Both the position numbers and the translations under genes were made by a program. From Macrostomum lignano (Eukaryota), in the NCBI GenBank assembly GCA_002269645.1, contig NIVC01002913.1, positions 24,646 through 88,645 on the forward strand: DNA of 64,000 nt. The letters are read 5' to 3'. The notes beneath the pieces were generated by a model. That model had not been told where the DNA came from. It saw only the letters and a list, made by a program, of their open reading frames with translations, and did not search any database. The number at the start of each line of letters is the position of its first letter. Positions within the stretch are counted from its first letter, which is position 1. Shown in pieces: positions 2,141-54,598 of the stretch.

Positions 2141-2410
2141 CTACACACAACTGAAGCTTTTCTGATCTTACACAGAATATTCGGCTTTATAGAGCTTTAT
2201 AGCCTTTATAGTCTAGTATATGGCCAAGGCTTAGTCTCATTTCCTCCCGCTGGCTGCGGCAATTAAATATTATAATCCCCACTTGATTTCGTTTCTTTGG
2301 CCTAGGAACGGCTGAGGACTGCGTTTCTAGGCCGAGGCGAGGCCTTAGACTTCTGTTGCTAATTCTAATTAATTACTCTTTCACTTGAGTTTCTGAGTCA
2401 GGAATCTGCG

Positions 2411-3145
2411 TGTTGTCCATGGCCAAAGTATCAACCTATCTGCGTGTTGTCTATGGCTCAACCTATCTGCGTGTTGTCTATGGCCCAACCTGTCAACCTA
2501 TCTGCGCGTTGTCTAATGACCCAACCTATCAACCTATCTGCGCGTTGTCTAATGACCCAACCTATCAACCTATCTGCGTGTTGTCTATGGCCCAACCTGT
2601 CAACCTATCTGCGTGTTGTCTAATGGCCCAACCTATCAACCTATCTGCGCGTTGTCTAATGACCCAACCTATCAACCTATCTGCGTGTTGTCTAATGGCC
2701 CAACCTATCAACCTATCTGCGTGTTGTCTATGGCCCAACCTATCAACCTATCTGCGCGTTGTCTCATGACCCAACCTATCAACCTATCTGCGTGTTGTCT
2801 AATGGCCCAACCTATCAACCTATCTGCGTGTTGTCTAATGGCCCAACCTATCAACCTATCTGCGCGTTGTCTAATGACCCAACCTATCAACCTATCTGCG
2901 TGTTGTCTATGGCCCAACCTGTCAACCTATCTGCGCGTTGTCTAATGGCCCAACCTATCAACCTATCTGCGCGTTGTCTAATGACCCAACCTATCAACCT
3001 ATCTGCGTGTTGTCTATGGCCCAACCTGTCAACCTATCTGCGCGTTGTCTAATGACCCAACATATCAACCTATCTGTGTGTTGTCTATGACCCAACCTAT
3101 CAACCTATCTGTGTTGTCTATGACCCAATCTATCAATCTATCTTT
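2411..3145. repeat. 35/36-bp minisatellite (TGTTGTCTA(A)TGRCCCAACCTATCAACCTATCTGCG), ~20 copies
   Basis: Period 36 read directly (tctgcgcg at 2501 and 2537). It explains the repetitive ORFs 2410-3052. Confidence 0.95.
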
Positions 3146-3439
3146 TGTCGTCTATGGTCCAAACTCTAATTTTATTATACCTATTGAGATTTTACGAACG
3201 TATATTTTGGAGAAATCTAGCTAAATGTATAAGTCATTGTATTTTGGCTGTATAGCTATCTCGTAAAACTGTGTTCACTAGAAAGTTCACAGGCCTATCT
3301 GTTAACCTGTGTTCACTTGAAGGTTGAACGATGAACGTTTGTTAGCCCATACGTGTAAGTGTTTGAGGATGTAATCGGATACTTGGAAGGCCTGTTGAAT
3401 TTGTAACACGCAAAACAGGCCGTGCTGCCCTGCATAGTA

Positions 3440-8700: not shown

Positions 8701-11700
8701 AGCTCAAAGACTCTCACGTCTCTCATATCTCCTCTCTCATATCTCTTCCCTCATCTCACTCTTTCTTTCTCCTCTACTCTCCCCTCTCTTCTATTTCCTC
8801 TGTACGCTCTTATCCGTCATCTATTCTCTTTCCTATTATCTCTCTTGTCTCCCTCTGCTATCTCATATCTCCCCTCTCATCTCCTCTCTCCTCTTCTCTT
8901 CTCTCTCCCTCTTCGTTTCCGCCTTACTCCCCTCTTCTCTTCCATCGGTCATGTCTAATCTATCCACTCATTTCTACTCTGTTTTATACCATCTCATGTC
9001 TCTTCTCTTTTTGATCTTCTCTTTACTCTCTTTTATGACTGATTGAAGATGCCAAATCTATCAAGATCCTCTCCGCGAAGCAGAAATCCTCTCCGTGAAA
9101 CTGAAAACCATTGAAATCCTCTCCGCGAAACAGAAATCCTCTCCGTGAAACTGAAAACCATCGAAATTATCTCTTTAAAACTGGACTCAATCGAAATTTT
9201 CTCCGTCAAAAAGAATAAAATATTAGGATTCATTGGTTAGGGTTATTGTTAGGGTTAGGGTTAGGGTTAGAGCTACACACAGCTGCGTGTTTAAATAAAA
9301 AATTGAGCCAATTGAATCAATTGATAGCGCAACCGATTTCAAAGTCAGTCAGTATCAGTCTCAGGTAAAGTGAACAAAAAGATTGCGCAATTTAAATCAA
9401 CCCTCCAGTACACAGAGACCGGCCCCTTTTCAATACGCAGTGGCAGTTAGAAATTGAACCCGGGTGTTGGGGCATTGAACTAAAAATGAGTACAATCTTT
9501 GCAGAAAGCTAAAAGTATGGAAATAGTTTTTGTATGCTGTGTTTTTAGTCTTTATATTTAAAGCAAACAATTTATATCCCCGAACTCAGCGTTGCAAGAT
9601 CTTTCCAGCAATATAAGTCTCTTCTTTCAAAGTTTAAAACTCGAGGAACAGTTAGCGTTTGAAACTGTCTGATTTATAGCATTGAAGTATCGAGTGTACG
9701 TTCACTGCCTGCTTGCAAGTTGATGCATTGAATTTCAATGTCCAACAAATACACAGGACTGCCCATTGAAAGGCAGGAAAACTTATCAGTAGCCATATCA
9801 TTGCGCAATTATCTATACAGTCAGCCAGTGAGCCAGGGTCCAAGTGTACACACGCAGCCACTGAGAACGCTCCCACCCCCCACTGGAAAGAAAATGCACT
9901 GCATAGATAGGGAAAAGTTGTGGCGCAATCACTTGAAATCATGAAATTTTCAGCTCCAAGCAGAAAGAGGGGACAATTAAGATTATCAAAGGTCAAGACC
10001 GCCGTTTTCTGCTTTTTTGAGGATCTTAGAAATTAAAATTTCAGAATTAAAATAGCCTATAGCCGACCTCGGATAATTTCCAATCTTCCCATATAAGTTT
10101 CAACGCTGAGTTGCCACTATTCAAGGAGGAGTTGTCGAAATGACACACACACACACACACACACACAGACAGACAGACAAACAACACGTCAACTTTAGTA
10201 TATATAGACGAGGCCAACTCCTCCTTCGGAGAAGAAAGGGGAAGAACTCCAATCAGCGGAATTCCATTCCCTGAACTCCATAAGCGGAATCCCATTTTCC
10301 AACACCTCTCCGCGCAACAGAAATCGTCTCCGTGAAACTGAACACTATCGAAATCCTCTCCGTGAAACTGAACACCATCGAAATATTCTCCGCGAAATAG
10401 AAATCCTCTCCGTGAAACTGGACTAAATCGAAATTTCTACGTCAAATAGCCCAGCTCTCAGAATTCATTGGTTAGGGTTAGGGTTAGGGTTGACAGCTGC
10501 GTGTTGAAAGGCGCCGTAAAAACATTGAACCAATTAAATTGCGCAACTTATTTCTCAGGCAGTCAGTATCAGCCTCAGTTAAAGTTAACAAAAAGATTGC
10601 GCAATCTAAATCAACCCTCAAATACACAGCAACCGACCCCCCTTCCAATACGCAGTGCAGCTAGAAATTGAACTCCCCCCCACCAACTATTGGGGGTCGG
10701 TCGAACCCCCATTGAACTCCAAAATGAGAACAATCTTTGCAGAAAGCTAAAAGTATGAAAATCTTTTCTTGAATGCTGTGAATTTAATTTTCATATTTAA
10801 AGCAAAAAACTTATATCCCCGAACTCATTGCAGCAAGATCTTTCCAGCAATATAAGTCTCTCCTCTCTAAGTTCAAAACTCGAGCAACAGTTAGTGTTTG
10901 AAACTTTCTGATTTTAAGCATTGAAATATCGAGTGTACGTTCACTGCCTGCTAAAGATGCTCGCAAGTTTATGCATTAAAATGCACTGAATTTCACTGTG
11001 CAAAAAATACACAGGGCTTCCTGTTAAAAAACAGAACACAAATAGTTGCGCAATTGTCTATAAAGTCAGTCAGTGAGCCAGGGTTCAAGTGTACACACGC
11101 AGCCACTGAGAACGCGACCATCCCCCACTTGAGAGAAAATACACTGCCAAGATAGAAAAATTTTATGGCGCAATCACTAAAATTGATGCAAATTTTCAGC
11201 TCCAAGCAGAAAGAGGGGACAATTAAGATTATCAAAGGTCAAGACCGCCATTTTCTGCTTTTTTAGGGATCTTAAAATGTAAAAATAAAAGATTAAAATA
11301 GCCTAAAGCCATCCTCGGAAAATTTGCAGTTTTCCCACATAAGTTTCAACGCTGACTTGCAAGTATTCTAGGAGGTACACAGGGCTTCCTGTTAAAAAAC
11401 AGAACACAAATAGTTGCGCAATTGTCTATAAAGTCAGTCAGTGAGCCAGGGTTCAAGTGTACACACGCAGCCACTGAGAACGCGACCATCCCCCCACTTG
11501 AGAGAAAATACACTGCCAAGATAGAAAAATTTTATGGCGCAATCACTAAAATTGATGCAAATTTTCAGCTCCAAGCAGAAAGAGGGGACAATTAAGATTA
11601 TCAAAGGTCAAGACCGCCATTTTCTGCTTTTTTAGGGATCTTAAAATGTAAAAATAAAAGATTAAAATAGCCTAAAGCCATCCTCGGAAAATTTGCAGTT

Positions 11701-14700
11701 TTTCCACATAAGTTTCAACGCTGACTTGCAAGTATTCTAGGAGGAGTTATCCAACAAACACACACACACACAGACAAACAACGCACCAACTTTATTATTA
11801 ACGAGGCCAACTCCTCCTTCGGAGAAGAAAGGGGAAGAACTCCAATCAGCGGAATTCCATTCCCTGAACTCCATCAGCGGAATCCCATTTTCCAACACCT
11901 CTCCGCGCAACAGAAATCGTCTCCGTGAAACTGAACACTATCGAAATCCTCTCCGTGAAACTGAACACCATCGAAATATTCTCCGCGAAATAGAAATCCT
12001 CTCCGTGAAACTGGACTAAATCGAAATTTCTACGTCAAACAGCCTAGCTCTCAGAATTCATTGGTTAGGGTTAGGGTTAGGGTTAGAGCTACACACAGCT
12101 GCGTGTTGAAAGGCGCCGTAAAAACATTGAACCAATTAAATTGCGCAACTTATTTCTCAGGCAGTCAGTATCAGCCTCAGTTAAAGTTAACAAAAGATTG
12201 CGCAATCTAAATCAACCCTCCAATACACAGCAACCGACCCCCCTTCCAATACGCAGTGCAGCTAGAAATTGAACCCCCCCCACCAACTATTGGGGGGTCG
12301 GTCGAACCCCCATTGAACTCCAAAATGAGAACAATCTTTGCAGAAAGCTAAAAGTATGAAAATCTTTTCTTGAATGCTGTGAATTTAATTTTCATATTTA
12401 AAGCAAAAAACTTATATCCCCGAACTCAGCGCTGCAAGCTCTTTCCAGCAATAAAAGTCTCGTCTCTCAAAGTTAAAAAATCGAGCAACAGTTAGCGTTT
12501 GAAACTTTCTGATTTTAAGCATTGAAATATCGAGTGTACCTTCACTGCCTGCTAAAGATGCTCGCGAGTTTATGCATTAAAATGCACTGAATTTCACTGT
12601 GCAAAAAATACACAGGGCTTCCTGTTAAAAAACAGAACACAAATAGTTGCGCAATTGTCTATAAAGTCAGCCAGTGAGCCAGGGTCCGATTGTACACACG
12701 CCGCTAATGAGAACGCGCCCATTCCCCCACAGGAGAGAAAATGCACTGGCGACATAGGAAAAAGTTGTGGCGTAATCACTCAAAATTTATGCCAATTTTC
12801 AGCTCCGAGCAGAAAAAGTGTCCAGAGAAGGTTAGGAAATCAGATTTCTGCTTTTTTAGGGATCTTAAAATTAAAAATGAAAGATTAAAACAGCCTAAAG
12901 CCGATTCCGGAAAATTTGCAGTATTCCCATATAAGTTTCAACGCTGAGTTGCACGTAGTCTAGGAGGATATCCTACAAACAAACAGACAAACAAACAAAC
13001 AAACAACGCACCAACTTTAGTATTAACGAGGCCAACTCCTCCTTCGGAGAAGAAAGGGGAAGAACTCCAATCAGCGGAATTCCATTCCCTGAACTCCATC
13101 AGCGGAATCCCATTTTCCAACACCTCTCCGCGCAACAGAAATCGTCTCCGTGAAACTGAACACTATCGAAATCCTCTCCGTGAAACTGAACACCATCGAA
13201 ATATTCTCCGCGAAATAGAAATCCTCTCCGTGAAACTGGACTAAATCGAAATTTCTACGTCAAACAGCCTAGCTCTCAGAATTCATTGGTTAGGGTTAGG
13301 GTTAGGGTTAGAGCTACACACAGCTGCGTGTTGAAAGGCGCCGTAAAAACATTGAACCAATTAAATTGCGCAACTTATTTCTCAGGCAGTCAGTATCAGC
13401 CTCAGTTAAAGTTAACACAAAGATTGCGCAATCTAAATCAACCCTCCAATACACAGCAACCGACCCCCTTCCAATACGCAGTGCAGCTAGAAATTGAACC
13501 CCCCCCCAACTATTGGGGGTCGGTCGAACCCCCATTGAACTCCAAAATGAGAACAATCTTTGCAGAAAGCTAAAAGTATGAAAATCTTTTCTTGAATGCT
13601 GTGAATTTAATTTTCATATTTAAAGCAAAAAACTTATATCCCCGAACTCAGCGCTGCAAGCTCTTTCCAGCAATAAAAGTCTCGTCTCTCAAAGTTAAAA
13701 ATCGAGCAACAGTTAGCGTTTGAAACTTTCTGATTTTAAGCATTGAAATATCGAGTGTACCTTCACTGCCTGCTAAAGATGCTCGCGAGTTTATGCATTA
13801 AAATGCACTGAATTTCACTGTGCAAAAAATACACAGGGCTTCCTGTTAAAAAACAGAACACAAATAGTTGCGCAATTGTCTATAAAGTCAGCCAGTGAGC
13901 CAGGGTCCGATTGTACACACGCCGCCAATGAGAACGCGCCCATTCCCCCACAGGAGAGAAAATGCACTGGCGACATAGGAAAAAGTTGTGGCGTAATCAC
14001 TCAAAATTTATGCCAATTTTCAGCTCCGAGCAGAAAAAGTGTCCAGAGAAGGTTAGGAAATCAGATTTCTGCTTTTTTAGGGATCTTAAAATTAAAAAAT
14101 GAAAGATTAAAACAGCCTAAAGCCGATTCCGGAAAATTTGCAGTATTCCCATATAAGTTTCAACGCTGAGTTGCACGTAGTCTAGGAGGAGATATCCTAC
14201 AAACAAACAGACAAACAAACAAACAAACAACGCACCAACTTTAGTATTAAGACGAGGCCAACTCCTCCTTCGGAGAAGAAAGGGGAAGAACTCCAATCAG
14301 CGGAATTCCATTCCCTGAACTCCATCAGCGGAATCCCATTTTCCAACACCTCTCCGCGCAACAGAAATCGTCTCCGTGAAACTGAACACTATCGAAATCC
14401 TCTCCGTGAAACTGAACACCATCGAAATATTCTCCGCGAAATAGAAATCCTCTCCGTGAAACTGGACTAAATCGAAATTTCTACGTCAAATAGCCCAGCT
14501 CTCAGAATTCATTGGTTAGGGTTAGGGTTAGGGTTGACAGCTGCGTGTTGAAAGGCGCCGTAAAAACATTGAACCAATTAAATTGCGCAACTTATTTCTC
14601 AGGCAGTCAGTATCAGCCTCAGTTAAAGTTAACAAAAAGATTGCGCAATCTAAATCAACCCTCAAATACACAGCAACCGACCCCCTTCCAATACGCAGTG

Positions 14701-18450: not shown

Positions 18451-18878
18451 CCTGTAGCGTATACATTGTTGAGTCTGAGGGGTGGACCCATGAATATGGA
18501 GCACTTATTGAGACTCCATATCTACCTCCATGTACGAGTTCAAACTTTATGAAGAAAATGTCAGAGTTGAGCTAGAGAAAATCCCATTGGAGGAGCGACT
18601 CGGAGACCAGTCCTCTCCCAAATGCTTCCCCTCTCTCCTCGACAGTCCTGCTAAATTTGCATTGCCCACCTCTGCGCATAGTCTCTCTCGCGCGAACCCT
18701 CGGCCAACCGACTGACTGCCTCTTCTCTCTGTCTATCCCTATTTATCATTTCAATCTTTTGTGAAAGCAACTTGCTGTAAGTTTAAAAATCAGACTGTCG
18801 CAGACAGGGACTTGAGTCAGATTACTCCGTTGCTACTACTCGTATTTTCTTAACGCTTTCAGGTAGGCGCCTAAGAAG

Positions 18879-18948
18879 ATGCATCTTCTACAGTTGGCTG
18901 CGCTAGTCGGGTCGCTAATCTCCGCGTCTGTCATCGTTGCTAGCGAAG
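18879..18948 (+). CDS. Neuropeptide precursor, coding exon 1 (signal peptide MHLLQLAALVGSLISASVIVASE)
   Basis: ATG at 18879, hydrophobic signal peptide, phase-1 donor G|gt at 18949. Upstream acceptor ttttcttaacgctttcag (18862) and donor gtaagt (18777) suggest a 5'UTR intron. Confidence 0.88.
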
Positions 18949-19088
18949 GTCTGTTGTTGACAAGGCCTACTGTCTACCAATTATATATACTTTTTCGTAT
19001 CTAAAGTAATCACCATTTAATAATTAAACTTGAGGTTCGAAATTTATGCAAACACAGCATAGTAAAGTACTTTTTATCCTTTCTGTAG

Positions 19089-19408
19089 CTTCATCAACAT
19101 CTCGACGGGATATCTACAACAATGATGACTTGGCCCGTTCGTTAGCAGCCTATCCATCATATTCGAAGCGCCAGCAGCGCTGGTCGAGCTCGTTCGGAAA
19201 GCGCCAGCCCCAGGTGTGGTCGAGCTCGTTCGGAAAGCGCCAGCAGCGCTGGTCGAGCTCGTTCGGAAAGCGCCAGCCCCAGGTGTGGTCGAGCTCCTTC
19301 GGTAAGCGACAGCGCCAGATGTGGTCGAGCTCCTTCGGCAAGCGACGTCAGCGATGGTCGAGCTCATTTGGAAAGCGCGACTCTGGATTCGAAGATAACG
19401 ACGAGTAA
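19089..19408 (+). CDS. Neuropeptide precursor, exon 2: six KR-flanked, Gly-extended WSSSFamide peptides
   Basis: Acceptor ttctgtag (19088) is phase-compatible with exon 1. Encodes KR-QQRWSSSFG-KR-QPQVWSSSFG-KR-QQRWSSSFG-KR-QPQVWSSSFG-KR-QRQMWSSSFG-KR-RQRWSSSFG-KR and an acidic tail. AATAAA at 19540. Confidence 0.93.
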
Positions 19409-19759
19409 AGTTGTTTTAAAAAATGGCGTCTAAACTCCCGTCGATGAGAATCAGTTACAGACCATTTTGGCATCAAATATCGAATTGATATGCGCTCCTC
19501 TCTTCCCAGCTCTGTCGGATTCGGTCCAACTGAACTTTGAATAAAAATAGACGCCTATAAGTTAAAGAACTCTAGCGATGCAGATCACGAGATTTGATTT
19601 TGAGTTCATTAAACTATTGCGCCTTGCGTTTGAGTCTGGTTATTTTTTATATGATTTCGAAGAAACACTTCTTAGAAACTATAGTACGGCATGGCACTGA
19701 GCTGCTGGGAAAGATTTTTAAAATTTAACAAAATTCCTGACGTTTTAAATTTATTGCAC

Positions 19760-22700
19760 AAGTAGTATGAAGACGCACACGTCTTTTTGCCACCAGTGAA
19801 CGGGCTTCTTTTTAGACGTGGGTCTTCATACTACTTGATAAACCTAGTTTTGTACCGATGAAAAAGAACTTTGAGAAGCTCAATAAAAATCTAAATCTCT
19901 ACTTCTCCCATTTTCTCTCTTTGTCTGTTCTGTTTCTCTCCACTCTAATCTCTCTCTAGTTCCACCAGTGAACGAGCCGAGCCCGGCGCCGCCGAAGGCG
20001 GCGTCGGGCGAGAGCGAGAGAACCCGAGGCCCCGCCAGGGGCCGAGCGCGAGTGAATAATTTCTACCCATGGCGGCCGAAGGCCGACATGGGCTAGAAAG
20101 TATTTACGAGTAAATAAGTTAGACTCTAATGCATTTTGAAATTTCACGTTTTTCCGCCAAAAAATGCTCCTGTTTTGCAACCACTGCACCGATTGAGTTG
20201 AGTGAGGTGTCGATCGATAGAAAACTTTTAGATCTATCGAATGAAGGTACTTTAAAATGCAGAGATTTTTTAAATGAGCCGTAAATTAACTGGAAAGACG
20301 ATTTTTTCAAAAGTGCTTCTAGGAGATCTCAAAATTCTGGTACACCTTACGAGATACAGCTTCGACATCTGAGAATCAAAGTTGTAAAACTAAATTTCCT
20401 ACAAAATGGTATATGGCGCTTTGATTTATTTTGGTATCTTTATGTAGTTTTGGTGGGTTTTTTGGGTAAAAAAATGACCCTCATTTTATTATTTCCCCAC
20501 TTTTTCCTACGAACCTTTTTAAGTTTCGGCTTCAAAGCAGTGCATTTGGATGCGCAATGCAAATATCTACAAGTGTCTAAAGCTTTGTTTTCCTACGCTT
20601 CTGCAGTGCTGAGAAAATTGACAAAAATCGATTTTTCAAAAAATCACATGTCTTTCGCATTATTGCTCATTATAATTTAGAGAACATGGTGCGAATAAGC
20701 CAATATCGAATTTCTATAGCATAGTTGCTGTACTATATTGGTGTAAATTGCTGCCGTCTGCTTTCGCTGCTTTCGGATTGAAAAATCGATCAGAAATCGA
20801 TAATTTGTGATTTTTGGCTGATGGAGTGCCAGAAAATGGGTGATTAAAATTTTAAAAGAATGCTAGATCAAATGTGGATACTGCAACGAGTTGTACTAAT
20901 GTCTGGCTAAAATTGACCAAGTTTTTGAGTGTCTGCAACAAGTGCTCATGTGTCAAAAGTGATTGGAAATCGATCAGAGTAGTGATTTTTTAATATTTTG
21001 CTTGAAATCAGGCAAAAAAACGCAATAAGACGGCATTATTTTTATGACGGCTGATTTCCCAAAAAACGAGGTATATTTGTGTGCAATTTCTAGTGATTCG
21101 GTTTATTTAGTAAAAAATTATCGATAAAAAACTGAAAACTTGACTTTTTACTTTCATGTTAGTTCCGGGGCTATTTAAACTGGAAATGGTAGGAATTTCG
21201 CACTGAAACCAATGCACAGTGTTCCATATAGTTAATTTAACAAATTTCTTGAATTTCATAACCATTCGATGTTTTTTTTCATGTAAAAAATGCCTTTTTT
21301 GCATCGAAATTCATCACATTAAGCTGCATACCGCTTTGCATAATCTGCATTTGCATGTGATTGCTTGCATGGCTTTGGCATTGGGCTGAGTTAAGCTGGT
21401 TAGAAAGGAAGGAAAGGAAAGGAAAGGAAGGAATAATCGTACATACAATGTACACACCCGTCCCTTCCAAGTGGGGTTGTGGCAACGCGAGAGGGCTTGG
21501 CGGCTTGGTTTGGAGGGCGTGTAATAGAGCTTCATTTGACTCGCACACAGACCAAGGGAAATTAGATCGATAAACGGGCGTCACGTGATTAGAATTTCGT
21601 ATTAAATTTAGCTCTTTAACTGCACATTTGAATTGCAAGCCCAGTACAAAGTTTGTCGGGCGCAAGATCCAAGTCACTACGTGTACAATCCTCCCCCCGG
21701 CTAAAAAGTCAGGCGATACGGCTTCTGAAGTAGGAATGTACAGTGTTTTGGAAAGACTTTATTTATAGCTTTCTTTGCAAAATATAACCCTGCTACGCTC
21801 TGGAGTCATTAGAAATTTTTTTATATCGAGGCCTTCTAAAGCCTATTATAGAAGACTCGATTCCAGCTCATGGCTGCGGGTCAGATGAGAGAGAAAGAGA
21901 ATAGAGAAGAGATAAGACTAAAGAGAAGATAAGAGATAAAACGAGAGCTAGAAGCGAGAGGAGAGGAGAGGGGAGACTAGAGAGAGATTAGAGTGGAGAG
22001 AAACAGAACAGACAAAGAGAGAAAATGGGAGAAGTAGAGATTTACATTTTTATTGAGCTTCTCAAAGTTCTTTTTCATCGGTACAAAACTAGGTTTATCA
22101 AGTAGTATGAAGACCCACGTCTAAAAAGAAGCCCGTTCACTGGTGGCAAAAAGACGTGTGCGTCTTCATACTACTTGTCTCCCCTCTCCTCTCCTCTCGC
22201 TTCTAGCTCTCGTTTTATCTCTTATCTTCTCTTTAGTCTTATCTCTTCTCTATTCTCTTTCTCTCTCATCTGACCCGCAGCCATGAGCTGGAATCGAGTC
22301 TTCTATAATAGGCTTTAGAAGGCCTCGATATAAAAAAATTTCTAATGACTCCAGAGCGTAGCAGGGTTATATTTTGCAAAGAAAGCTATAAATAAAGTCT
22401 TTCCAAAACACTGTACATTCCTACTTCAGAAGCCGTATCGCCTGACTTTTTAGTCGGGGGAGGATTGTACACGTAGTGACTTGGATCTTGCGCCCGACAA
22501 ACTTTGTACTGGGCTTGCAATTCAAATGTGCAGTTAAAGAGCTAAATTTAATACGAAATTCTAATCACGTGACGCCCGTTTATCGATCTAATTTCCCTTG
22601 GTCTGTGTGCGAGTAAAATGAAGCTCTATTACACGCCCTCCAAACCAAGCCGCCAAGCCCTCTCGCGTTGCCACAACCCCACTTGGAAGGGACGGGTGTG

Positions 22701-30213: not shown

Positions 30214-31020
30214 TTTGAAGAGAGGAGAGGAGAGCAGAGGAGGAGAGGAGAGGAGAGAAGAGGAGAGGAGAGGAGAGGAGAGGAGAGGAGGAGAGGAGAG
30301 GAGAGGAGAGGAGAGGAGAGGAGAGTAGAAGAGGAGGAGAGGAGAGGAGAGGAGAGGAGAGGAGAGGAGGAGAGGAGATGAGGAGAGGAGAGGAGAGGAG
30401 AGGAGAGGAGAGGAGGAGAGCAGAGCAGAGGAGAGGAGAGGAGAGGAGAGCAGAGCAGAGGAGAGGAGAGGAGAGGAGAGGAGAGGAGAGGAGAGGAGAG
30501 CAGAGCAGAGGAGAGGAGAGGAGAGGAGAGGAGGAGAGCAGAGCAGAGGAGAGGAGAGGAGAGGAGAGGAGAGGAGAGGAGAGGAGAGGAGAGGAGAGGA
30601 GAGGAGAGGAGATGAGGAGAGGAGAGGTGAGGAGAGGAGAGGAGAGGAGAGGAGAGGAGAGGAGAGGAGGAGAGCAGAGCAGAGGAGAGGAGAGGAGAGG
30701 AGAGGAGAGCAGAGCAGAGGAGAGGAGAGGAGAGGAGAGGAGAGGAGGAGAGCAGAGCAGAGGAGAGGAGAGGAGAGGAGAGGAGAGGAGAGGTGAGGAG
30801 AGGAGAGGAGAGGAGAGGAGAGGAGAGGAGAGGAGAGGAGGAGAGCAGAGCAGAGGAGAGGAGAGGAGAGGAGAGGAGAGGAGAGGAGAGGAGAGGAGAT
30901 GAGGAGAGGAGAGGTGAGGAGAGGAGAGGAGAGGAGAGGAGAGGAGAGGAGAGGAGAGGAGAGCAGAGCAGAGCAGAGGAGAGGAGAGGAGAGAAGAGAA
31001 GAAGAGGGGAGAGGAGAGGA
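30214..31020. repeat. (GGAGA)n purine-rich pentamer satellite
   Basis: Visible directly. It produces the spurious EERRG/SPLLS ORFs. Confidence 0.97.
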
Positions 31021-31150
31021 GACGTGTGCGCGCCTTTTTTAGCCGTCCCTCTCACGGGGTCCTCTTGTGACACCGCTGTGCCACAGCCCAACCCCAATAA
31101 CTGGTGGCCATCGCAGTCTTCCATGCATTTGAGCAGCGCTCTATCTGAGC

Positions 31151-31906
31151 TCAAACATATCGCGGCGAATCCAGCCCGGTCAGCAGTCTGTACACCGCCT
31201 CCGGCATGGTTCTCAGTCGGATTTCGCCCACAGCCGAGGCCAGGGCGGCCACGATCCGGTCGTGCGGGGCGGCCGCCACCGACCGACCGTCGATCTCCAC
31301 TATCCGGTGGCCGATTCGGACGCCGCCGCGCTCGGCCACGCCGCCGCGGAGCAGGGCGCAGACGACGCCGTCGCGGACGCTGAAGCCGAGCGGCCGGCGA
31401 GGATCCAAACGCTGGATGACGGCCTCGGACACGGGCGGCCGGGGCAGTACGCGTAGTCGGACAGTAGCGGCCGAGCGGCAGGCCCGAAGCCGACGTCTGC
31501 AGGCGGCCAGCGGCAGGCCGACCAGACTGGTGCCGTCCACCGCCAGCAAAAAGTCGCCGACGCTGAGCTGTCCGGAGCGAACAGCCGGGCCGCCTGGCCG
31601 GAGGTTGGCCAGTAGAACGGACGGCAGCAGGGCGCCCCAGCCGCTATCGACAAGGGCGATGCCGAGTGCTTCGCCGCGCTCCTTATAGATTGTCACCTCT
31701 AACGGCGCGGTGTCCTCCAAGCCGTTGTTGCTGTCGTCAACCTGGTCGTTGTCGTTGTCGAAGTCGACTCTGACAGCGGAGGTGCCGCTGACGCTGTCGC
31801 CGTCGTTGCCCGGCGTCGTCTTTGGCGGCACGGCGCCGCCGCGGTGCACGAATTGCGCGTAGGCGGCGTTGAACGCGCAGCCAATGGTGTGCGCCACCTG
31901 CGAGGC
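31151..31906 (-). CDS. lin-10: Mint/X11 (APBA/lin-10) adaptor, last exon: end of PTB, PDZ1, PDZ2
   Basis: GEALGIALVDSGWGALLPSVLLANLRPGGPAVRSGQLSVGD and LGFSVRDGVVCALLRGGVAERGGVRIGHRIVEI...GEIRLRTMPEAVYRLLTG match Mint PDZ1/PDZ2. Acceptor ccgccag at 31907-31908, TGA at 31151. Confidence 0.95.
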   Translation of the reverse strand, partial: ASQVAHTIGCAFNAAYAQFVHRGGAVPPKTTPGNDGDSVSGTSAVRVDFDNDNDQVDDSNNGLEDTAPLEVTIYKERGEALGIALVDSGWGALLPSVLLANLRPGGPAVRSGQLSVGDFLLAVDGTSLVGLPLAACRRRLRACRSAATVRLRVLPRPPVSEAVIQRLDPRRPLGFSVRDGVVCALLRGGVAERGGVRIGHRIVEIDGRSVAAAPHDRIVAALASAVGEIRLRTMPEAVYRLLTGLDSPRYV

Positions 31907-32458: not shown

Positions 32459-33638
32459 AAGGTGCTAAAACAGTCTCAAAGGTGCTAAAACAGTCCCAAA
32501 GGTGCTAAAACAGTCCCAAAGGTGCTAAAACAGTCTCAAAGGTACTAAAACAGTCCCAAAGGTGCTAAAACAGTCCCAAAGGTGCTAAAGCAGTCCCAAA
32601 GGTGCTAAAACAGTCCCAAAGGTGCTAAAACAGTCCCAAAGGTGCTAAAGCAGTCCCAAAGGTGCTAAAACAGTCCCAAAGGTGCTAAAACAGTCCCAAA
32701 GGTGCTAAAACAGTCTCAAAGGTACTAAAACAGTCCCAAAGGTGCTAAAACAGTCCCAAAGGTGCTAAAACAGTCCCAAAGGTGCTAAAACAGTCCCAAA
32801 GGAGCTAAAACAGTCTCAAAGGTGCTAAAACAGTCTCAAAAGTGCTAAAACAGTCTCAAAGGTGCTAAAACAGTCCCAAAGGTGCTAAAACAGTCCCAAA
32901 GGTCCTAAAACAGTCTCAAAGGTACTAAAACAGTCACAAAGGTGCTAAAACAGTCCCAAAGGTGCTAAAACAGTCTCAAAGGTGCTAAAACAGTCCCAAA
33001 GGTGCTAAAACAGTCTCAAAGGTGCTAAAACAGTCCCAAAGGTGCTAAAACAGTCTCAAAGGTGCTAAAACAGTCCCAAAGGTGCTAAAACAGTCTCAAA
33101 GGTGCTAAAACAGTCCCAAAGGTCCTAAAACAGTCTCAAAGGTACTAAAACAGTCTCAAAGGTGCTAAAACAGTCCCAAAGGTGCTAAAACAGTCCCAAA
33201 GGTGCTAAAACAGTCCCAAAGGAGCTAAAACAGTCTCAAAGGTGCTAAAACAGTCCCAAAGGTGCTAAAACAGTCCCAAAGGTGCTAAAACAGTCCCAAA
33301 GGAGCTAAAACAGTCTCAAAGGTGCTAAAACAGTCCCAAAGGAGCTAAAACAGTCTCAAAGGTGCTAAAACAGTCTCAAAAGTGCTAAAACAGTCTCAAA
33401 GGTGCTAAAACAGTCTCAAAGGTGCTAAAACAGTCTCAAAAGTGCTAAAACAGTCTCAAAAGTGCTAAAACAGTCTCAAAGGTGCTAAAACAGTCTCAAA
33501 GGTGCTAAAACAGTCTCAAAGGTGCTAAAACAGTCTCAAAAGTGCTAAAACAGTCTCAAAAGTGCTAAAACAGTCTCAAAGGTGCTAAAACAGTCTCAAA
33601 GGTGCTAAAACAGTCTCAAAAGTGCTAAAACAGTCTCA
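32459..33638. repeat. 20-bp minisatellite GGTGCTAAAACAGTCYCAAA, ~59 copies (Mint intron)
   Basis: Exact 20-bp period visible across lines 32461-33601. Confidence 0.97.
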
Positions 33639-33728
33639 AGGTACCGGCGGTTGATCTTCAATGCTGAACGCATCCGAACAGCAATAAACAACCATAGACT
33701 TCGCTATGTGCCTCGCTGCCCGGCTCAC

Positions 33729-35235: not shown

Positions 35236-36324
35236 CACTGTCAGTGTGTGTGCCAATCAAACTGCCAGTGTGTGTGCCAATCAAACTGCCAGTGTGTGTG
35301 TGCCAATCAAACTGCCAGTGTGTGTGCCAATCAAACTGCCAGTGTGCGTGTGCCAATCAAACTGCCAGTGTGTGTGCCAATCAAACTGCCAGTGTGTGTG
35401 CCAATCAAACTGCCAGTGTGTGTGCTAATCAAACTGCCAGTGTGTGTGCCAATCAAACTGCCAGTGTGTGTGCTAATCAAACTGCCAGTGTGTGTGCCAA
35501 TCAAACTGCCAGTGTGTGTGTGCCAATCAAACTGCCAGTGTGTGTGCCAATCAAACTGCCAGTGTGTGTGCCAATCAAACTGCCAGTGTGTGTGCCAATC
35601 AAACTGCCAGTGTGTGTGCCAATCAAACTGCCAGTGTGTGTGCCAATCAAACTGCCAGTGTGTGTGCCAATCAAACTGCCAGTGTGTGTGCCAATCAAAC
35701 TGCCAGTGTGTGTGCCAATCAAACTGCCAGTGTGTGTGCTAATCAAACTGCCAGTGTGTGTGCCAATCAAACTGCCAGTGTGTGTGTGCCAATCAAACTG
35801 CCAGTGTGTGTGCCAATCAAACTGCCAGTGTGTGTGCCAATCAAACTGCCAGTGTGTGTGCCAATCAAACTGCCAGTGTGTGTGCCAATCAAACTGCCAG
35901 TGTGTGTGCTAATCAAACTGCCAGTGTGTGTGCCAATCAAACTGCCAGTGTGTGTGTGCCAATCATACTGCCAGTGTGTGTGCCAATCAAACTGCCAGTG
36001 TGTGTGCCAATCAAACTGCCAGTGTGTGTGCCAATCAAACTGCCAGTGTGTGTGCTAATCAAACTGCCAGTGTGTGTGCCAATCATACTGCCAGTGTGTG
36101 TGCCAATCAAACTGCCAGTGTGTGTGCCAATCATACTGCCAGTGTGTGTGCCAATCATACTGCCAGTGTGTGTGCCAATAAAACTGCCAGTGTGTGTGCC
36201 AATCATACTGCCAGTGTGTGTGCCAATCATACTGCCAGTGTGTGTGCCAATCATACTGCCAGTGTGTGTGCCAATCATACTGCCAGTGTGTGTGCCAATC
36301 ATACTGCCAGTGTGTGTGTGCCAA
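35236..36324. repeat. 24-bp minisatellite GCCAATCAAACTGCCAGTGTGTGT, ~44 copies
   Basis: Visible directly, with occasional 26-bp units and a CAATCATAC variant enriched at the right end. Confidence 0.97.
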
Positions 36325-36723: not shown

Positions 36724-38297
36724 ACAGTCTGACAGTCTGACAGTGTCTTGTAGAATCTGACAGTGTCCTGTAGAATCTGACAGTATCCTGTAGAATCTGA
36801 CAGTATCCTGTAGAATCTGACAGTGTCTTGTAGAATCTGACAGTGTCCTGTAGAATCTGACAGTATCCTGTAGAATCTGACAGTATCCTGTAGAATCTGA
36901 CAGTGTCTTGTAGAATCTGACAGTGTCCTGTAGAATCTGACAGTATCCTGTAGAATCTGACAGTATCCTGTAGAATCTGACAGTGTCTTGTAGAATCTGA
37001 CAGTGTCTTGTAGAATCTGACACTATCCTGTAGAATCTGACAGTATCCTGTAGAATCTGACAGTATCCTGTAGAATCTGACAGTGTCTTGTAGAATCTGA
37101 CAGTGTCCTGTAGAATCTGACAGTGTCTTGTAGAATCTGACAGTGTCTTTTAGAATCTGACAGTGTCATGTAGAATCTGACAGTATCCTGTAGAATCTGA
37201 CAGTGTCTTTTAGAATCTGACAGTGTCTTGTAGAATCTGACAGTGTCTTGAAGAATCTGACAGTGTCCTGTAGAATCTGACAGTGTCTTTTAGAATCTGA
37301 CAGTGTCATGTAGAATCTGACAGTATCCTGTAGAATCTGACAGTGTCTTTTAGAATCTGACAGTGTCTTGTAGAATCTGACAGTGTCTTGTAGAATCTGA
37401 CAGTGTCTTGTAGAATCTGACAGTGTCCTGTAGAATCTGACAGTATCTTGTAGAGTCTGACAGTCTCCTGTAGAGTCTGACAGTGTCATGTAGAATCTGA
37501 CAGTGTCCTGTAGAATCTGACAGTTTCTTGTAGAATCTGACAGTGTCTTGTAGAGTCTGACAGTGTCCTGTAGAGTCTGACAGTGTCCTGTAGAGTCTGA
37601 CAGTGTCTTGTAGAATCTGACAGTGACTTGTAGAATCTGACAGTGTCCTGTAGAGTCTGACAGTGTCTTGTAGAATCTGACAGTGACTATGTAGCCTAGT
37701 GGTCAGAGCGTCGGACTCACGACTTGAAGGTCGGGGGTTCGATTCCCGATCCTACTGGAACAATTTGTGTCCTTGAGCAAGACACTTAACTCTGCATTGC
37801 TTCAGTTCACCCAGCTGTAAAATGGGTGCCAGCATTAGCTGGGGTAATTGAGGGTGTGTGTGGCGACCCCCTGCAGTCCTTGGACTGAACAGCGTACTCA
37901 GCCTCAGATGCGCTGCGCAATGGCTGCGGCTGAGCTGTCGGTTGCACATCTGGCCCAATTGGGGCAGGTGTAATCAATTGTTATTATTGTTATAATTATA
38001 ATAATAATAGTATAATAGTATTAATAATATAATAGTATAATAGTATAATAGTATAATAGTATTAGTATTAATTATATTGACACCTAATTGTAGACTATAA
38101 TAATAATAGAATATTATTAATCTATTAGAATAGACACAGTATTCAGACTATACGAGCGTATTATTATAGTCTGACAGTGTCTTGTAGAATCTGACAGCAT
38201 CTTAAAGAGTCTGACAGTGTCTTGTAGAATCTGACAGCATCTTAAAGAGTCTGACAGTGTCCTGTAGAATCTGACAGCATCTTAAAGAGTCTGACAG
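36724..38297. repeat. 20-bp minisatellite CTGACAGTGTCYTGTAGAAT, interrupted by the SINE at 37689-38110
   Basis: Array 36724-37686 resumes at 38169-38297 after the SINE tail. Confidence 0.95.
37689..38110 (+). mobile_element. tRNA-derived CORE-SINE with AT-rich tail
   Basis: A box TAGCCTAGTGG and B box GGTTCGATTCC. 37766-37826 (tgtgtccttgagcaagacacttaac...cagctgtaaaatggg) aligns with the MIR CORE domain. (AAT/TATAA) tail, and a second copy at 17631-18450. Confidence 0.88.
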
Positions 38298-41005: not shown

Positions 41006-41774
41006 TTTCCCAAAGCTTTTTCACGGTTAGGTGAAATTTAAGCGTCATGATAGTAGAGGCTTTAAACTTTTAGGCAATATGAAATTCAGTGTCATATGAA
41101 ACACTTCCCCCTTTGTGGAAGAGCTGGCAATTCTGGTTGGCCTCCGCTGCCGCTTGCTAAAGCGGGTTTTAAAACCACCGATTGCAAAGAGCATGTACAC
41201 CGCATAAAAAACAGCACACACACACACAGAGCTGAGGGAGACTCGGCTCAACTGGGCAACTCCCTGTGAGACACCCGCACCGCACTGCACCAGTGCTGGT
41301 TCAGGCACCGGGCCTGCCCACCTCACCTCCTTCGAAACCTTCCTCTATAAATCACCCTCTATACAGTGGGCGAATAGCAGTTGCACTTTAGCCCAACACA
41401 CAGAGTGTGTGGGAGTTGGAGCTGATCCTTCTTTGCCAGTCGCAGCTGTCTACTCTCCCCCCTCTCTCTCTCAGCGCTTAGTCACTCACTCGCTCCCACT
41501 CCATATAGTCTTATTCTTTACTTAATTCGTACTGCATGGCTTTATGTTTTTTGTGCATATCTGTATTGTAGCTGTACTCTGCAGGACTCTTGTACGAGCT
41601 ATTAAATGCCTGTATGCCGTAATTTTCCTTGGGCATGTTGCTTAATCTTGTGTACTCTTAGTTTGACCCTTTGCCAGTTCACGTAGTTATCTTTAAATCA
41701 TTGTGTGTCATTTTTAGCGCATACAGAGGCAAACTGTGATCGTTGTGTGAAAGATGGCTAGCAGGGAGAGTAAA

Positions 41775-44150: not shown

Positions 44151-44200
44151 GCGTTGGCGGTAGAATCCTGACGAAATGTACATGTACATTTAGATGTCAC

Positions 44201-50676: not shown

Positions 50677-50998
<322 letters not shown>

Positions 50999-54194: not shown

Positions 54195-54598
<404 letters not shown>

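What the first reader, a model, noticed from the sequence alone, without database searches (positions are those of the whole stretch)
18879..19408. Neuropeptide precursor releasing six (pGlu)-x-WSSSFamide peptides of unassigned family
Seen in sequence: a two-exon, 129-aa prepropeptide with a signal peptide, an RR/KR-bounded spacer (DIYNNDDLARSLAAYPSYS) and six KR-flanked peptides ending in WSSSF-G. These are QQRWSSSF x2, QPQVWSSSF x2, QRQMWSSSF and RQRWSSSF. A 69-bp dimer (19166-19234) is duplicated almost exactly, so copy number grew recently. The ORF track misses the signal-peptide exon. Established: prohormone convertase cleavage at KR, PAM amidation of C-terminal Gly and pyroglutamate formation from N-terminal Gln. 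Inference: a WSSSFamide C-terminus does not match the FMRFamide/RFamide, NPF, MIP (W-x6-Wamide), kinin or allatostatin-A consensus motifs I know, so this may be a lineage-specific signalling peptide with an orphan GPCR.
Basis: partly seen in the sequence, partly recalled or inferred. Interest (0 to 1): 0.82.

Follow-up and report, generated by a model that had tools for sequence, protein, structure and literature searches.

The report
WSSSF-amide multi-copy neuropeptide precursor gene
A small two-exon animal gene encodes a secreted precursor that should be cut into six near-identical amidated peptides ending in WSSSF. The gene looks real and under selection, but it is not family-less: it closely resembles the little-studied mollusc 'Wx3Yamide' and acoel 'SSxxxF' peptides, whose receptors and functions are also unknown.

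Summary
Exon 1 (18879-18948) and exon 2 (19089-19408) join in frame across a GT..AG intron to give a 129-aa protein. It has a hydrophobic N-terminus, an RR/KR-bounded spacer and six KR-flanked x-WSSSF-G units, and the 69-bp dimer is duplicated at 67/69 identity. All 6 or more nucleotide differences among the six WSSSFGKR cores are synonymous third-position changes, so the peptide is under purifying selection. This is not one of the window's many non-coding minisatellites.

The 'unassigned family' inference is only partly right. An exhaustive HMMER search found one unnamed close relative (UniParc UPI0007A1322A, 7x GQRWSSGF-G-KR). Below it came about twenty mollusc Wx3Yamide precursors (QQGWHSDY-G-KR, some QQGWHSGF-G-KR). 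Oyster pQQGWHIAYamide is MS-verified, and the mollusc genes share the same two-exon, phase-1 layout. The acoel C. macropyga SSxxxF precursor (KRSQQRWSSFRSFRKR) is even closer at the peptide-core level.

No catalogue I could search contains WSSSF or WSSGF. The source organism could not be identified, and expression, processing and receptor are untested. Verdict: a genuine new member of a known kind, a multi-copy aromatic-x3-aromatic-amide neuropeptide precursor. It is moderately interesting.

The parts
18879..18948 (+). Coding exon 1: start codon (context AAGAAGATGC) plus 23 codons and 1 nt (phase 1). Encodes MHLLQLAALVGSLISASVIVASE, the signal-peptide-like N-terminus.
   Evidence: 17-residue uncharged stretch LAALVGSLISASVIVAS, maximum Kyte-Doolittle(15) 2.37, no upstream ATG in 18700-18878. 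GC 0.53.
18949..19088 (+). Intron, 140 nt, GT..AG, phase 1, AT-rich.
   Evidence: Donor AAG|GTCTGT and acceptor TTATCCTTTCTGTAG|C. GC 0.29-0.31 against 0.57 for the CDS. Same position and phase as the intron in the Haliotis and Mya Wx3Yamide genes.
19089..19408 (+). Coding exon 2: end of the signal region, RR, spacer, six peptide units, acidic tail and stop codon.
   Evidence: It lies within the mechanical ORF 19046-19408.
19109..19165 (+). Spacer DIYNNDDLARSLAAYPSYS between the RR (19103-19108) and the first KR (19166-19171).
   Evidence: Its similarity to the spacers of P0004 and Cmac_1299.1 is not significant.
19172..19198 (+). Peptide unit 1, QQRWSSSF-G (predicted pGlu-QRWSSSF-NH2, written as pQQRWSSSFamide, monoisotopic mass 1006.462), followed by KR at 19199-19204.
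19205..19234 (+). Peptide unit 2, QPQVWSSSF-G (predicted mass 1046.482), followed by KR at 19235-19240.
19241..19267 (+). Peptide unit 3, QQRWSSSF-G, followed by KR at 19268-19273.
19274..19303 (+). Peptide unit 4, QPQVWSSSF-G, followed by KR at 19304-19309.
19310..19339 (+). Peptide unit 5, QRQMWSSSF-G (predicted mass 1137.503), followed by KR at 19340-19345.
19346..19372 (+). Peptide unit 6, RQRWSSSF-G. It yields RQRWSSSFamide (1051.531), or pQRWSSSFamide (878.404) if the KRR site is cut after the third basic residue. Followed by KR at 19373-19378.
19379..19408 (+). Acidic C-terminal tail DSGFEDNDE and the stop codon.
19166..19303 (+). Two tandem copies of a 69-bp two-peptide module (19166-19234 and 19235-19303).
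   Evidence: 67/69 identical and both differences synonymous. TRF reports period 69.
19540..19545 (+). AATAAA, the likely polyadenylation signal, 132 nt after the stop codon.
   Evidence: Pattern match only.

Best explanation
This is a real protein-coding gene for a small secreted prepropeptide of 129 aa, with two coding exons.

Inferred mechanism, from established knowledge of the regulated secretory pathway:
1. The N-terminal about 20-24 residues direct the protein into the ER and are removed.
2. Prohormone convertases cut after RR and after each KR.
3. A carboxypeptidase trims the basic residues.
4. Peptidylglycine alpha-amidating monooxygenase converts each C-terminal Gly into an amide.
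5. N-terminal Gln cyclises to pyro-Glu.

The products would be six 7-9-residue peptides with an invariant W-S-S-S-F-NH2 end: 2x pQQRWSSSFa, 2x pQPQVWSSSFa, pQRQMWSSSFa and (R)QRWSSSFa. These most likely act as a neuropeptide on a still unknown GPCR.

The gene is not family-less. It belongs to the class of multi-copy aromatic-x3-aromatic-amide peptides. Its nearest relatives are an unnamed precursor with 7x GQRWSSGF-G-KR (UniParc UPI0007A1322A), the acoel SSxxxF precursor Cmac_1299.1 (QQRWSSFRSF) and the mollusc Wx3Yamide precursors (pQQGWHIAYamide). Copy number grew by a recent tandem duplication of a 69-bp two-peptide module.

Shown here: the anatomy, the selection on the core, the relatives and the shared gene structure. 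Inferred: secretion, processing, neuronal expression, the receptor, and common descent with the named families.
For: - Anatomy and in-frame splice.
- GC contrast between exons and intron.
- Six of six inferred substitutions in the WSSSFGKR cores are synonymous in the coding frame and none is synonymous in the other frames. Unit lengths differ only by multiples of 3 (33 or 36 nt).
- A polyA signal follows the stop codon.
- Relative in another species: P0004 is 71% identical over the repeats and has the same signal-end, acidic spacer, K(K)R and repeats order.
- In an index-free HMMER search of 1.84 billion proteins, 21 of the top 23 hits are W-x3-[Y/F]-G-KR multi-copy precursors (P0004 plus 20 with W-x3-Y copies). 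All those that carry names come from molluscs. Generic GKR-repeat families such as AstA-like, PxFVamide and MRFamide score lower.
- Mollusc P0008 mixes Y-ending and F-ending copies (QQGWHSGF, QQGWHSHF).
- With processing sites excluded, peptide-core scores are P0004 30.2 (0/5000 nulls reach it), Cmac_1299.1 27.0 (0/5000), P0008 24.0 (4/5000), other gastropod QQGW types 17-21 (about 1-5%).
- Smith-Waterman score against Cmac_1299.1 is 72, versus 30 +/- 6 for shuffles.
- Haliotis rubra and Mya arenaria Wx3Yamide genes have exon 1 = signal peptide + 1 nt (phase 1) and exon 2 = the rest, as in the window.
- Oyster pQQGWHIAYamide was detected by LC-MS/MS with pyro-Glu and amidation. Acoel SSxxxF peptides were MS-confirmed.
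Against: - There is no transcript, peptide or expression evidence of any kind, and the source organism is unknown.
- No signal-peptide predictor was available.
- A single-exon start at ATG 19046 (MQTQHSKVLFILSVASSTS...) also gives a short hydrophobic N-terminus and cannot be excluded. It has a poorer start context and lies in the AT-rich trough.
- Similarity to the named families rests on 5-8 residues. The spacers are not significantly similar (p about 0.3).
- All six copies end in F rather than the Y that defines Wx3Yamide.
- The window peptide has S-S-S-F, not S-S-x-x-x-F, and is amidated, whereas Cmac_1299.1 peptides are not.
- The conserved bivalve N-terminal peptide (LPGWxVYYGKR) is absent.
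- A phase-1 intron at the end of a signal peptide is common among secreted-protein genes, so the gene-structure match is weak evidence.
- The compared sequences were selected because they are similar, so the p-values are optimistic.
- The minisatellite negative control had few usable events.
Confidence: 0.66

Rival explanations
1. This is a genuine neuropeptide precursor, but a lineage-restricted invention. On this view the resemblance to mollusc Wx3Yamide, acoel SSxxxF/FxxxFamide and nematode F-S-S-[SA]-F-amide peptides is convergence on a short aromatic-x3-aromatic-amide motif.
For: - Only the repeat units align. The spacers are not significantly similar.
- Only one clear relative (P0004) was found in 1.84 billion proteins. 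Nothing was found in the word-indexed protein search or in two metagenome scans.
- The C-terminal residue is F rather than Y, and the precursor is much shorter (129 aa against 250-700 aa in molluscs).
- Several unrelated-looking families score about equally at the core level (Childia FSSSF 19.0, nematode 18.5-18.8, bivalves 14-20). That shows how easily such motifs recur.
Against: - The QQxW start, the W at position -5, the aromatic amide and the 8-residue length are all shared with gastropod and oyster peptides. F-ending copies occur inside mollusc precursors.
- The QQRWSS hexamer is shared with Cmac_1299.1. It was the only 'RWSS' in about 113,000 characters of acoel sequences.
- Intron position and phase are the same as in the mollusc genes.
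- Wx3Y-type proteins outrank every other GKR-repeat family.
Confidence: 0.25
2. This is a secreted multi-copy amidated peptide that is not neuronal, for example an exocrine pheromone, a gland, venom or adhesive secretion, or an antimicrobial peptide made through the same convertase and amidation pathway.
For: The sequence anatomy indicates only secretion and processing, not the cell type. No expression data exist. The relatives are all annotated 'uncharacterized', and no function is known for Wx3Yamide.
Against: - Short pGlu-...-aromatic-amide peptides in abutting KR-flanked copies are the typical neuropeptide format.
- The oyster counterpart was recovered from ganglia by MS, and its precursor was profiled in visceral-ganglia transcriptomes.
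- Acoel SSxxxF peptides were catalogued as neuropeptide multi-copy peptides.
- The peptides are neither cationic-amphipathic nor Cys-rich, as antimicrobial peptides or toxins would be.
Confidence: 0.07
3. This is a non-functional ORF created by one of the window's many tandem repeats, with a chance signal-like exon upstream.
For: The window contains about twenty tandem arrays that generate long spurious ORFs. Other frames and the opposite strand across 19074-19367 are also open.
Against: - All 6 inferred core substitutions are synonymous in one frame only.
- Unit length changes keep the reading frame.
- Every unit has Gly plus a dibasic site.
- An in-frame exon with canonical splice sites and a hydrophobic N-terminus precedes the repeats.
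- The peptide is conserved in the same frame in another species.
- The motif is expected 1.5e-5 times by chance.
Confidence: 0.02

Closest known systems
Unnamed precursor embedded in UniParc UPI0007A1322A (P0004, a 1305-aa chimeric gene model, organism not given by the tools)
   Same: It has seven abutting KR-flanked copies of (A/P/D)(G/D)QRWSSGF-G. It is 71% identical to the window over the repeats. It has the same order of hydrophobic signal end, acidic spacer, K(K)R and repeats, and the highest core score of all (30.2).
   Different: The peptides end in WSSGF rather than WSSSF and have no N-terminal Gln, so no pyro-Glu. The model is fused to transposon-like sequence that is absent from the window. 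Spacer similarity is not significant.
Acoel SSxxxF(amide) multi-copy peptides, specifically Convolutriloba macropyga Cmac_1299.1 'SSFRSF peptide' (Thiel et al. 2018, PMC6188537)
   Same: It is a short precursor (97 aa) with a signal peptide, a spacer and KR/RR-flanked copies NWSSLRGF, NWSSFRSF and SQQRWSSFRSF. The QQRWSS hexamer is identical to the window's. KRSQQRWSSFRSFRKR aligns with KR-QQRWSS--SFGKR. The core score is 27.0, with 0 of 5000 nulls reaching it.
   Different: The core is two residues longer (W-S-S-x-x-x-F). There is no Gly, so the peptides are not amidated. It has only three copies. The group is described as acoel-specific, and whether the window comes from an acoel is unknown.
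Mollusc Wx3Yamide precursors (Stewart et al. 2014, PMC4200219; scallop, PMC5996578)
   Same: They are multi-copy, KR-flanked and Gly-amidated, with W four residues before an aromatic C-terminus. Gastropod and oyster copies are 8-mers that start QQ-x-W (pQQGWHIAYamide, MS-verified). Some copies end in F (QQGWHSGF). The genes have two coding exons with a phase-1 intron at the end of the signal peptide. They were the top-scoring family in the exhaustive search.
   Different: The defining residue is Tyr, not Phe. The middle residues differ (H/N/S-T/S/A-x against S-S-S). The precursors are 2-5 times longer and often have spacers and a conserved extra N-terminal peptide. No similarity exists outside the repeats. 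The family is regarded as molluscan.
Acoelomorph FxxxFamide peptides (Thiel et al. 2018), for example the Childia submaculatum precursor with KR-FSSSF-(G)KR and FTASF
   Same: They have an aromatic-x3-Phe-amide end, and one Childia copy has the identical S-S-S-F end.
   Different: F replaces W at position -5. They are 5-residue peptides with no QQ-x extension. The core score is only 19.0 (about 2% of nulls reach it).
Nematode F/L-S-S-[SA]-F-amide precursors (P0048 from Mesorhabditis spiculigera CAJ0571716, and P0026). From memory, these resemble the C. elegans NLP-7 / 'MSFamide' group.
   Same: They are KR-flanked amidated copies such as DPRFFSSSF-G and DPRFLSSAF-G, with the same S-S-S-F end.
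   Different: F or L replaces W. They have a DPR N-terminal motif. Core scores are 18.5-18.8 (about 2%). The link to NLP-7 rests on my recall only, and the literature search found nothing.

Membership tests
Amidated multi-copy neuropeptide precursor (generic class) | N-terminal signal peptide | tested here: inconclusive
   A 17-residue uncharged h-region follows MH, and small residues (A-S-E-A) lie near the exon junction. No SignalP-type predictor was available, and an alternative start at 19046 exists.
Amidated multi-copy neuropeptide precursor (generic class) | Repeated peptides bounded by dibasic convertase sites, each followed by a Gly amide donor | tested here: met
   Six of six units are KR-...-G-KR.
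Amidated multi-copy neuropeptide precursor (generic class) | Selective constraint on the mature peptide rather than on the DNA repeat | tested here: met
   6 synonymous and 0 non-synonymous changes in the WSSSFGKR cores. The variable N-terminal halves change in whole codons.
Amidated multi-copy neuropeptide precursor (generic class) | Expression in neurons or endocrine cells, and detection of the processed peptides | not testable with these tools
   No RNA-seq, in situ or MS data exist for the unknown source organism.
Mollusc Wx3Yamide (Stewart 2014) | Trp four residues before the C-terminal aromatic residue (W-x-x-x-aromatic), with Gly and a dibasic site, in multiple copies | tested here: met
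   W-S-S-S-F-G-KR occurs six times. The same pattern is in 21 of the top 23 database hits.
Mollusc Wx3Yamide (Stewart 2014) | C-terminal residue is Tyr (Y-amide) | tested here: not met
   All six copies end in Phe. Mollusc P0008 has 2 F-ending copies out of 9, so the position tolerates F, but no mollusc precursor is all-F.
Mollusc Wx3Yamide (Stewart 2014) | N-terminal Gln-Gln-x-Trp (pyro-Glu) 8-mer format, as seen in gastropods, oysters and scallop | tested here: met
   QQRWSSSF twice, and five of six units start with Gln. Compare QQGWHSDY, QQGWHIAY and QQGWHSGF.
Mollusc Wx3Yamide (Stewart 2014) | Gene structure: signal-peptide exon, phase-1 intron, then a single exon with all the peptides | tested here: met
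   Window 23 codons + 1 nt, Haliotis 30 + 1, Mya 20 + 1. This layout is common among secreted-protein genes, so it is weak evidence.
Mollusc Wx3Yamide (Stewart 2014) | Sequence similarity outside the repeated peptides (spacer; conserved N-terminal LPGWxVYYGKR peptide of bivalves) | tested here: not met
   No such peptide is in the window precursor, and alignments cover only the repeats.
Mollusc Wx3Yamide (Stewart 2014) | Shared cognate receptor | not testable with these tools
   No receptor is known for Wx3Yamide.
Acoel SSxxxF(amide) peptides (Thiel 2018) | S-S-x-x-x-F core motif | tested here: not met
   The window has S-S-S-F, that is S-S-x-F, two residues shorter. Aligning it to Cmac_1299.1 needs a 2-residue gap.
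Acoel SSxxxF(amide) peptides (Thiel 2018) | Significant peptide-level similarity to a listed member | tested here: met
   The QQRWSS hexamer is shared with Cmac_1299.1. Core score 27.0 (0/5000 nulls reach it); Smith-Waterman 72 against 30 +/- 6. Caveat: the match was found by a text search for 'RWSS'.
Acoel SSxxxF(amide) peptides (Thiel 2018) | Acoel origin (the group is reported only from Acoela) | not testable with these tools
   The source organism was not identifiable. The best hit to the PRKX exon is 62% identical and unnamed.
Acoelomorph FxxxFamide (Thiel 2018) | F-x-x-x-F-amide | tested here: not met
   Position -5 is Trp in all six copies. Only the S-S-S-F-amide end matches Childia FSSSF.
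FMRFamide/RFamide, MIP (W-x6-W-amide), kinin (F-x-x-W-G-amide), allatostatin-A (Y/F-x-F-G-L-amide), SALMFamide (S-x-[LF]-x-F-amide) | The respective C-terminal consensus motif (as I know them from established literature) | tested here: not met
   -W-S-S-S-F-NH2 has no Arg at -2, no second Trp, no FGL and no L/F at -3. AstA-like, MRFamide and PxFVamide precursors appear only as low-ranking generic hits.

The most novel reading that the evidence does not exclude
The WSSSF-amide gene could be a bridging member showing that four groups are one ancient bilaterian aromatic-x3-aromatic-amide neuropeptide family with a single, still orphan, receptor lineage. The four groups are mollusc Wx3Yamide, acoel SSxxxF/FxxxFamide, the P0004-type WSSGFamide and perhaps nematode F-S-S-[SA]-F-amide peptides. 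The receptor may lie in the aromatic-amide-activated GPCR expansion related to GPR139/142 that Thiel et al. 2021 describe. The window peptide combines the QQxW head of the mollusc and acoel forms with the SSSF-amide tail of the acoel and nematode forms.
Probability: 0.15. Interest if true: 0.6.

Novelty: new member of a known kind. Interest (0 to 1): 0.36.

Why it matters
Wx3Yamide and the acoel multi-copy peptides are among the neuropeptide groups still treated as clade-specific, with no receptor and no function (PMC8398477, PMC6188537). This precursor has a mollusc/acoel-type head (QQxW) and an acoel/nematode-type tail (SSSF-amide). It also shares the intron position and phase of the mollusc genes. 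That makes a concrete question testable: are these 'lineage-specific' peptides one old family?

The precursor also supplies defined ligands, with exact masses, for peptidomics and GPCR deorphanisation in whatever animal this is. On its own, though, finding one more multi-copy amidated precursor in an animal genome is routine. Its value depends on identifying the organism and the receptor.

Tried and rejected
1. Word-indexed protein search with the precursor found nothing.
2. Three further homologous-protein runs (kinase N-lobe, PDZ ORF, 219-aa ORF) timed out.
3. The one neighbour search that ran (last PRKX exon) returned only short fragments, at most 62% identical. The named ones were insects and the best came from an unnamed ENA assembly, ERZ25070786. 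The organism therefore could not be identified. Because only fragments of 214 aa or less were listed, I do not treat the absence of mollusc or flatworm hits as evidence about the taxon.
4. Exact-product look-ups of P0004 and of ORF 19046-19408 found nothing on record.
5. Two metagenome scans, one with the protein and one with a degenerate two-unit DNA pattern, found nothing.
6. Rfam (gathering and E <= 1) and tRNA scans gave no lineage-diagnostic RNA.
7. Pfam on the precursor gave only sub-threshold low-complexity matches (Mucin-like, Nucleoporin_FG), which I rejected.
8. Apparent spacer similarity (DIYNNDDL / DYYPTDLD / DGFDADEL) looked suggestive by eye but is not significant (p about 0.3), so I dropped it.
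9. The transposon part of P0004 is absent from the window, so it gives no clue to relatedness.
10. Literature searches for WSSSF, WSSGF, SSFamide and FSSAF found nothing relevant. The same holds for the supplements of the planarian (Collins 2010), spiralian (Thiel 2021), Fasciola and Taenia npp papers and the main text of a schistosome paper. Koziol 2016 and McVeigh 2009 are not held in the library.
11. A negative control on other period-3n minisatellites worked for only two arrays, with 2 and 4 events. Two others fell out of register.
12. I considered a fungal alpha-factor-like pheromone precursor and rejected it. The window has animal gene content (a Mint/X11 orthologue, PRKX with an intron longer than 12 kb) and very low gene density.
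Full report
OBSERVATION. An ATG at 18879 opens a 70-nt exon that ends at AAG|GTCTGT. A 140-nt AT-rich intron ends at TTATCCTTTCTGTAG|C, and the frame continues from 19089 to a stop codon at 19406-19408. The 129-aa product is MHLLQLAALVGSLISASVIVASE/ASSTS-RR-DIYNNDDLARSLAAYPSYS-KR, followed by QQRWSSSFG, QPQVWSSSFG, QQRWSSSFG, QPQVWSSSFG, QRQMWSSSFG and RQRWSSSFG, each followed by KR, and then DSGFEDNDE. The mechanical ORF list starts only at ATG 19046 and so misses exon 1. The 69-bp two-peptide module 19166-19234 is repeated at 19235-19303 with 67/69 identity.

IS IT MORE THAN CHANCE? The window is full of tandem arrays that create long meaningless ORFs, so this question matters. Four points separate this array from those.

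- WSSSFGKR is expected 1.5e-5 times in the six-frame translation and occurs six times in one frame.
- The six 24-nt cores differ at four columns. All four are third codon positions, and all 6 inferred changes are synonymous in the coding frame, while none is synonymous in the other two frames. Only 21% of possible single-base changes there would be synonymous. A control on two other period-3n minisatellites showed no such bias, but it had only 2 and 4 events.
- Unit length varies only by whole codons.
- The same peptide frame is conserved in another species (P0004, 71% identity over the repeats).

I conclude that the coding frame is real and the WSSSF-G-KR unit is under purifying selection.

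GENE MODEL. GC content is 0.53 in exon 1, 0.29-0.30 in the intron, 0.63-0.67 in exon 2 and about 0.40 downstream. The start context is AAGAAGATGC, and there is no upstream ATG in 18700-18878. AATAAA lies 132 nt after the stop codon. The N-terminus has a 17-residue uncharged stretch. A single-exon alternative starting at ATG 19046 (MQTQHSKVLFILSVASSTS) would also give a short hydrophobic N-terminus and the same peptides. It has a poorer start context and lies in the AT-rich trough, so I rank it second, but I cannot exclude it without RNA data. No signal-peptide predictor was available.

SURROUNDINGS AND ORGANISM. The window is animal DNA with very low gene density.

- The C-terminal part of a Mint/X11 (APBA) orthologue lies at 31151-31897 on the minus strand (E = 2.5e-68 to human APBA2).
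- A PRKX/DC2-type PKA-family kinase is split between 49717-50349 and 62559-62933, with an intron longer than 12 kb.
- There are no tRNAs and no Rfam families.

I could not identify the species. Three neighbour-gene searches timed out. The one that ran returned only short fragments, at most 62% identical, and the best came from an unnamed ENA assembly.

RELATIVES. The word-indexed search found nothing. The index-free HMMER search of 1.84 billion representative proteins gave 56 hits.

- The closest is P0004 (UniParc UPI0007A1322A). It is a chimeric 1305-aa model whose C-terminal part reads ...IALIIECTAALTSEDGFDADEL...KKR followed by seven copies of (A/P/D)(G/D)QRWSSGF-G-KR.
- Twenty of the other top-23 hits, and one lower-ranked hit, are multi-copy precursors whose KR-flanked, Gly-ending peptides all fit W-x3-Y, occasionally W-x3-F. 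Examples are QQGWHSDY (Haliotis rubra), QQGWHTMY (Littorina), QQGWETAY (Batillaria) and APGWGATY / APQWLATY (Dreissena, Mya and others). P0008 mixes QQGWHSGF and QQGWHSHF with Y-ending copies.
- Every named hit of this type is a mollusc protein annotated 'uncharacterized'.
- Generic GKR-repeat families (AstA-like YSFGL, PxFVamide, GTMRF) rank lower.

WHAT IS THIS MOLLUSC FAMILY? It is the 'Wx3Yamide' family, named by Stewart et al. 2014 from oysters as a novel, possibly lophotrochozoan family (PMC4200219). It was found again in scallop as SNKWSIAYamide, LRQGWNIAYamide and QQGWHIAYamide (PMC5996578). In 2021 it was still called a molluscan peptide with no known function (PMC8398477). The oyster supplement records pQQGWHIAYamide detected by LC-MS/MS with N-terminal pyro-Glu and C-terminal amidation. 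Those are exactly the modifications predicted for QQRWSSSF-G. I also compared gene structures. In Haliotis rubra, exon 1 is 30 codons + 1 nt and ends at the end of the signal peptide. In Mya arenaria it is 20 codons + 1 nt. In both, a single second exon holds everything else. The window has 23 codons + 1 nt. The match in position and phase is consistent with homology, but such introns are common in genes for secreted proteins.

A SECOND, CLOSER LITERATURE MATCH. The xenacoelomorph neuropeptidome paper (Thiel et al. 2018, PMC6188537) lists an acoel-specific, MS-supported group of 'SSxxxF(amide)' peptides. One Convolutriloba macropyga precursor, Cmac_1299.1, reads ...RNNWSSLRGFNRRNWSSFRSFRKRSQQRWSSFRSFRKRSTDNPLD*. 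KRSQQRWSSFRSFRKR aligns with the window's KR-QQRWSS--SFGKR. The same supplement has a Childia FxxxFamide precursor with KR-FSSSF-(G)KR. The Smith-Waterman score of the window against Cmac_1299.1 is 72, versus 30 +/- 6 for shuffles (0 of 2000 reach it). With a single window unit it is 54 versus 26 +/- 5 (1 of 2000). The spacers alone are not significantly similar.

Because shuffling also destroys the processing sites, I scored peptide cores only, against composition-matched synthetic families:

- P0004: 30.2 (0/5000 nulls reach it)
- Cmac_1299.1: 27.0 (0/5000)
- P0008: 24.0 (4/5000)
- Other gastropod QQGW types: 17-21 (about 1-5%)
- Childia FSSSF: 19.0 (2%)
- Nematode DPRFFSSSF/DPRFLSSAF: 18.5-18.8 (2%)
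- Bivalve types: 14-20

These comparisons were chosen because the sequences look similar, so the p-values are optimistic.

INTERPRETATION. The gene most likely encodes a neuropeptide precursor processed by the standard route of signal peptidase, convertase, carboxypeptidase, PAM and glutaminyl cyclisation. These steps are inferred from established pathway knowledge, not tested here. The products would be six W-S-S-S-F-amide peptides, and one search gives exact masses, validated against the published oyster value.

The exact peptides are not in any text or supplement I could search. However, the format falls squarely in the aromatic-x3-aromatic-amide class, with three independent named neighbours. 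It fails one defining feature of each: F instead of Y for Wx3Yamide, S-S-x-F instead of S-S-x-x-x-F for the acoel group, and W instead of F for FxxxFamide. So I do not file it as a member of any one of them. I file it as a new member of that broader, known kind.

Rivals are ranked as follows. A lineage-specific neuropeptide with a convergent motif gets 0.25. A non-neuronal secreted peptide gets 0.07. A meaningless repeat ORF gets 0.02.

NOVELTY AND INTEREST. The gene is a new member of a known kind. The interesting possibility, at probability about 0.15, is that it bridges mollusc Wx3Yamide and the acoel (and perhaps nematode) peptides into one old bilaterian family with an orphan receptor. 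Thiel et al. 2021 (PMC8557429) point to a GPCR expansion activated by aromatic-amide peptides as a place to look. Everything decisive (organism, transcript, peptides, cell type, receptor) remains to be done.

Noticed in passing
window 18740-18862: A TATA-like TATTTAT lies at 18740. There is a possible 86-nt 5'-UTR intron at 18777-18862 (CTG|GTAAGT ... CGCTTTCAG|G) just upstream of the start codon. If real, the gene would have three exons. These are pattern matches only.
   Followed up: partly
window 49717-50349 and 62559-62933 (+): A PRKX/DC2-type PKA-family kinase is split by an intron longer than 12 kb. The first exon ends near ...GTPEYL and the last exon encodes LVGTPPFYDD...HFRDF*. The best database identity is only 62%, to contigs of ENA assembly ERZ25070786 that show the same two-exon layout.
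   Followed up: partly
window 55880-56539 (-): A 219-aa ORF lies inside the kinase intron. It is not low-complexity and has no Pfam or PDB match. The database search with it timed out, so its status as a real gene or a transposon remnant is unknown.
   Followed up: partly
window 31151-31897 (-): This is the C-terminal exon of a Mint/X11 (APBA) orthologue, with the end of the PTB domain plus two PDZ domains, ending ...DSPRYV* (E = 2.5e-68 to human APBA2). It is very GC-rich and abuts a (GAGAG)n array at 30220-31022 that creates long fake ORFs on both strands.
   Followed up: partly
window, about 20 loci (e.g. 2404-3162, 32459-33639, 35237-36318, 36736-37694, 39012-41009, 50677-50998, 54195-54599, 56609-57363, 58113-58796, 59471-59933, 60657-61233, 61806-62338, 63074-63543): The density of micro- and minisatellite arrays is exceptional (periods 2-143 bp, up to 2 kb long). 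They account for most of the long ORFs in the mechanical ORF list. There is also a 369-bp unit duplicated at 99% identity at 11008-11744.
   Followed up: partly
window 19960-20055: An isolated stretch of about 95 bp is very GC-rich (GC up to 0.74), 550 nt downstream of the precursor's stop codon. It is flanked by CT-rich sequence and its nature is unknown.
   Followed up: no
window 44194-44451 (+): A sub-threshold Rfam match to the bacterial sRNA isrG (26.8 bits against a gathering score of 100, E = 0.003). It is almost certainly a chance match in eukaryotic DNA.
   Followed up: no
P0031 (JGI metatranscriptome protein, 306 aa): An unidentified environmental precursor carries W-x3-F-G-KR copies (NENPWLGGF, DENPWVGGF, DGNQPWAYGF). 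It may be another F-ending relative of the class, from an unknown organism.
   Followed up: no
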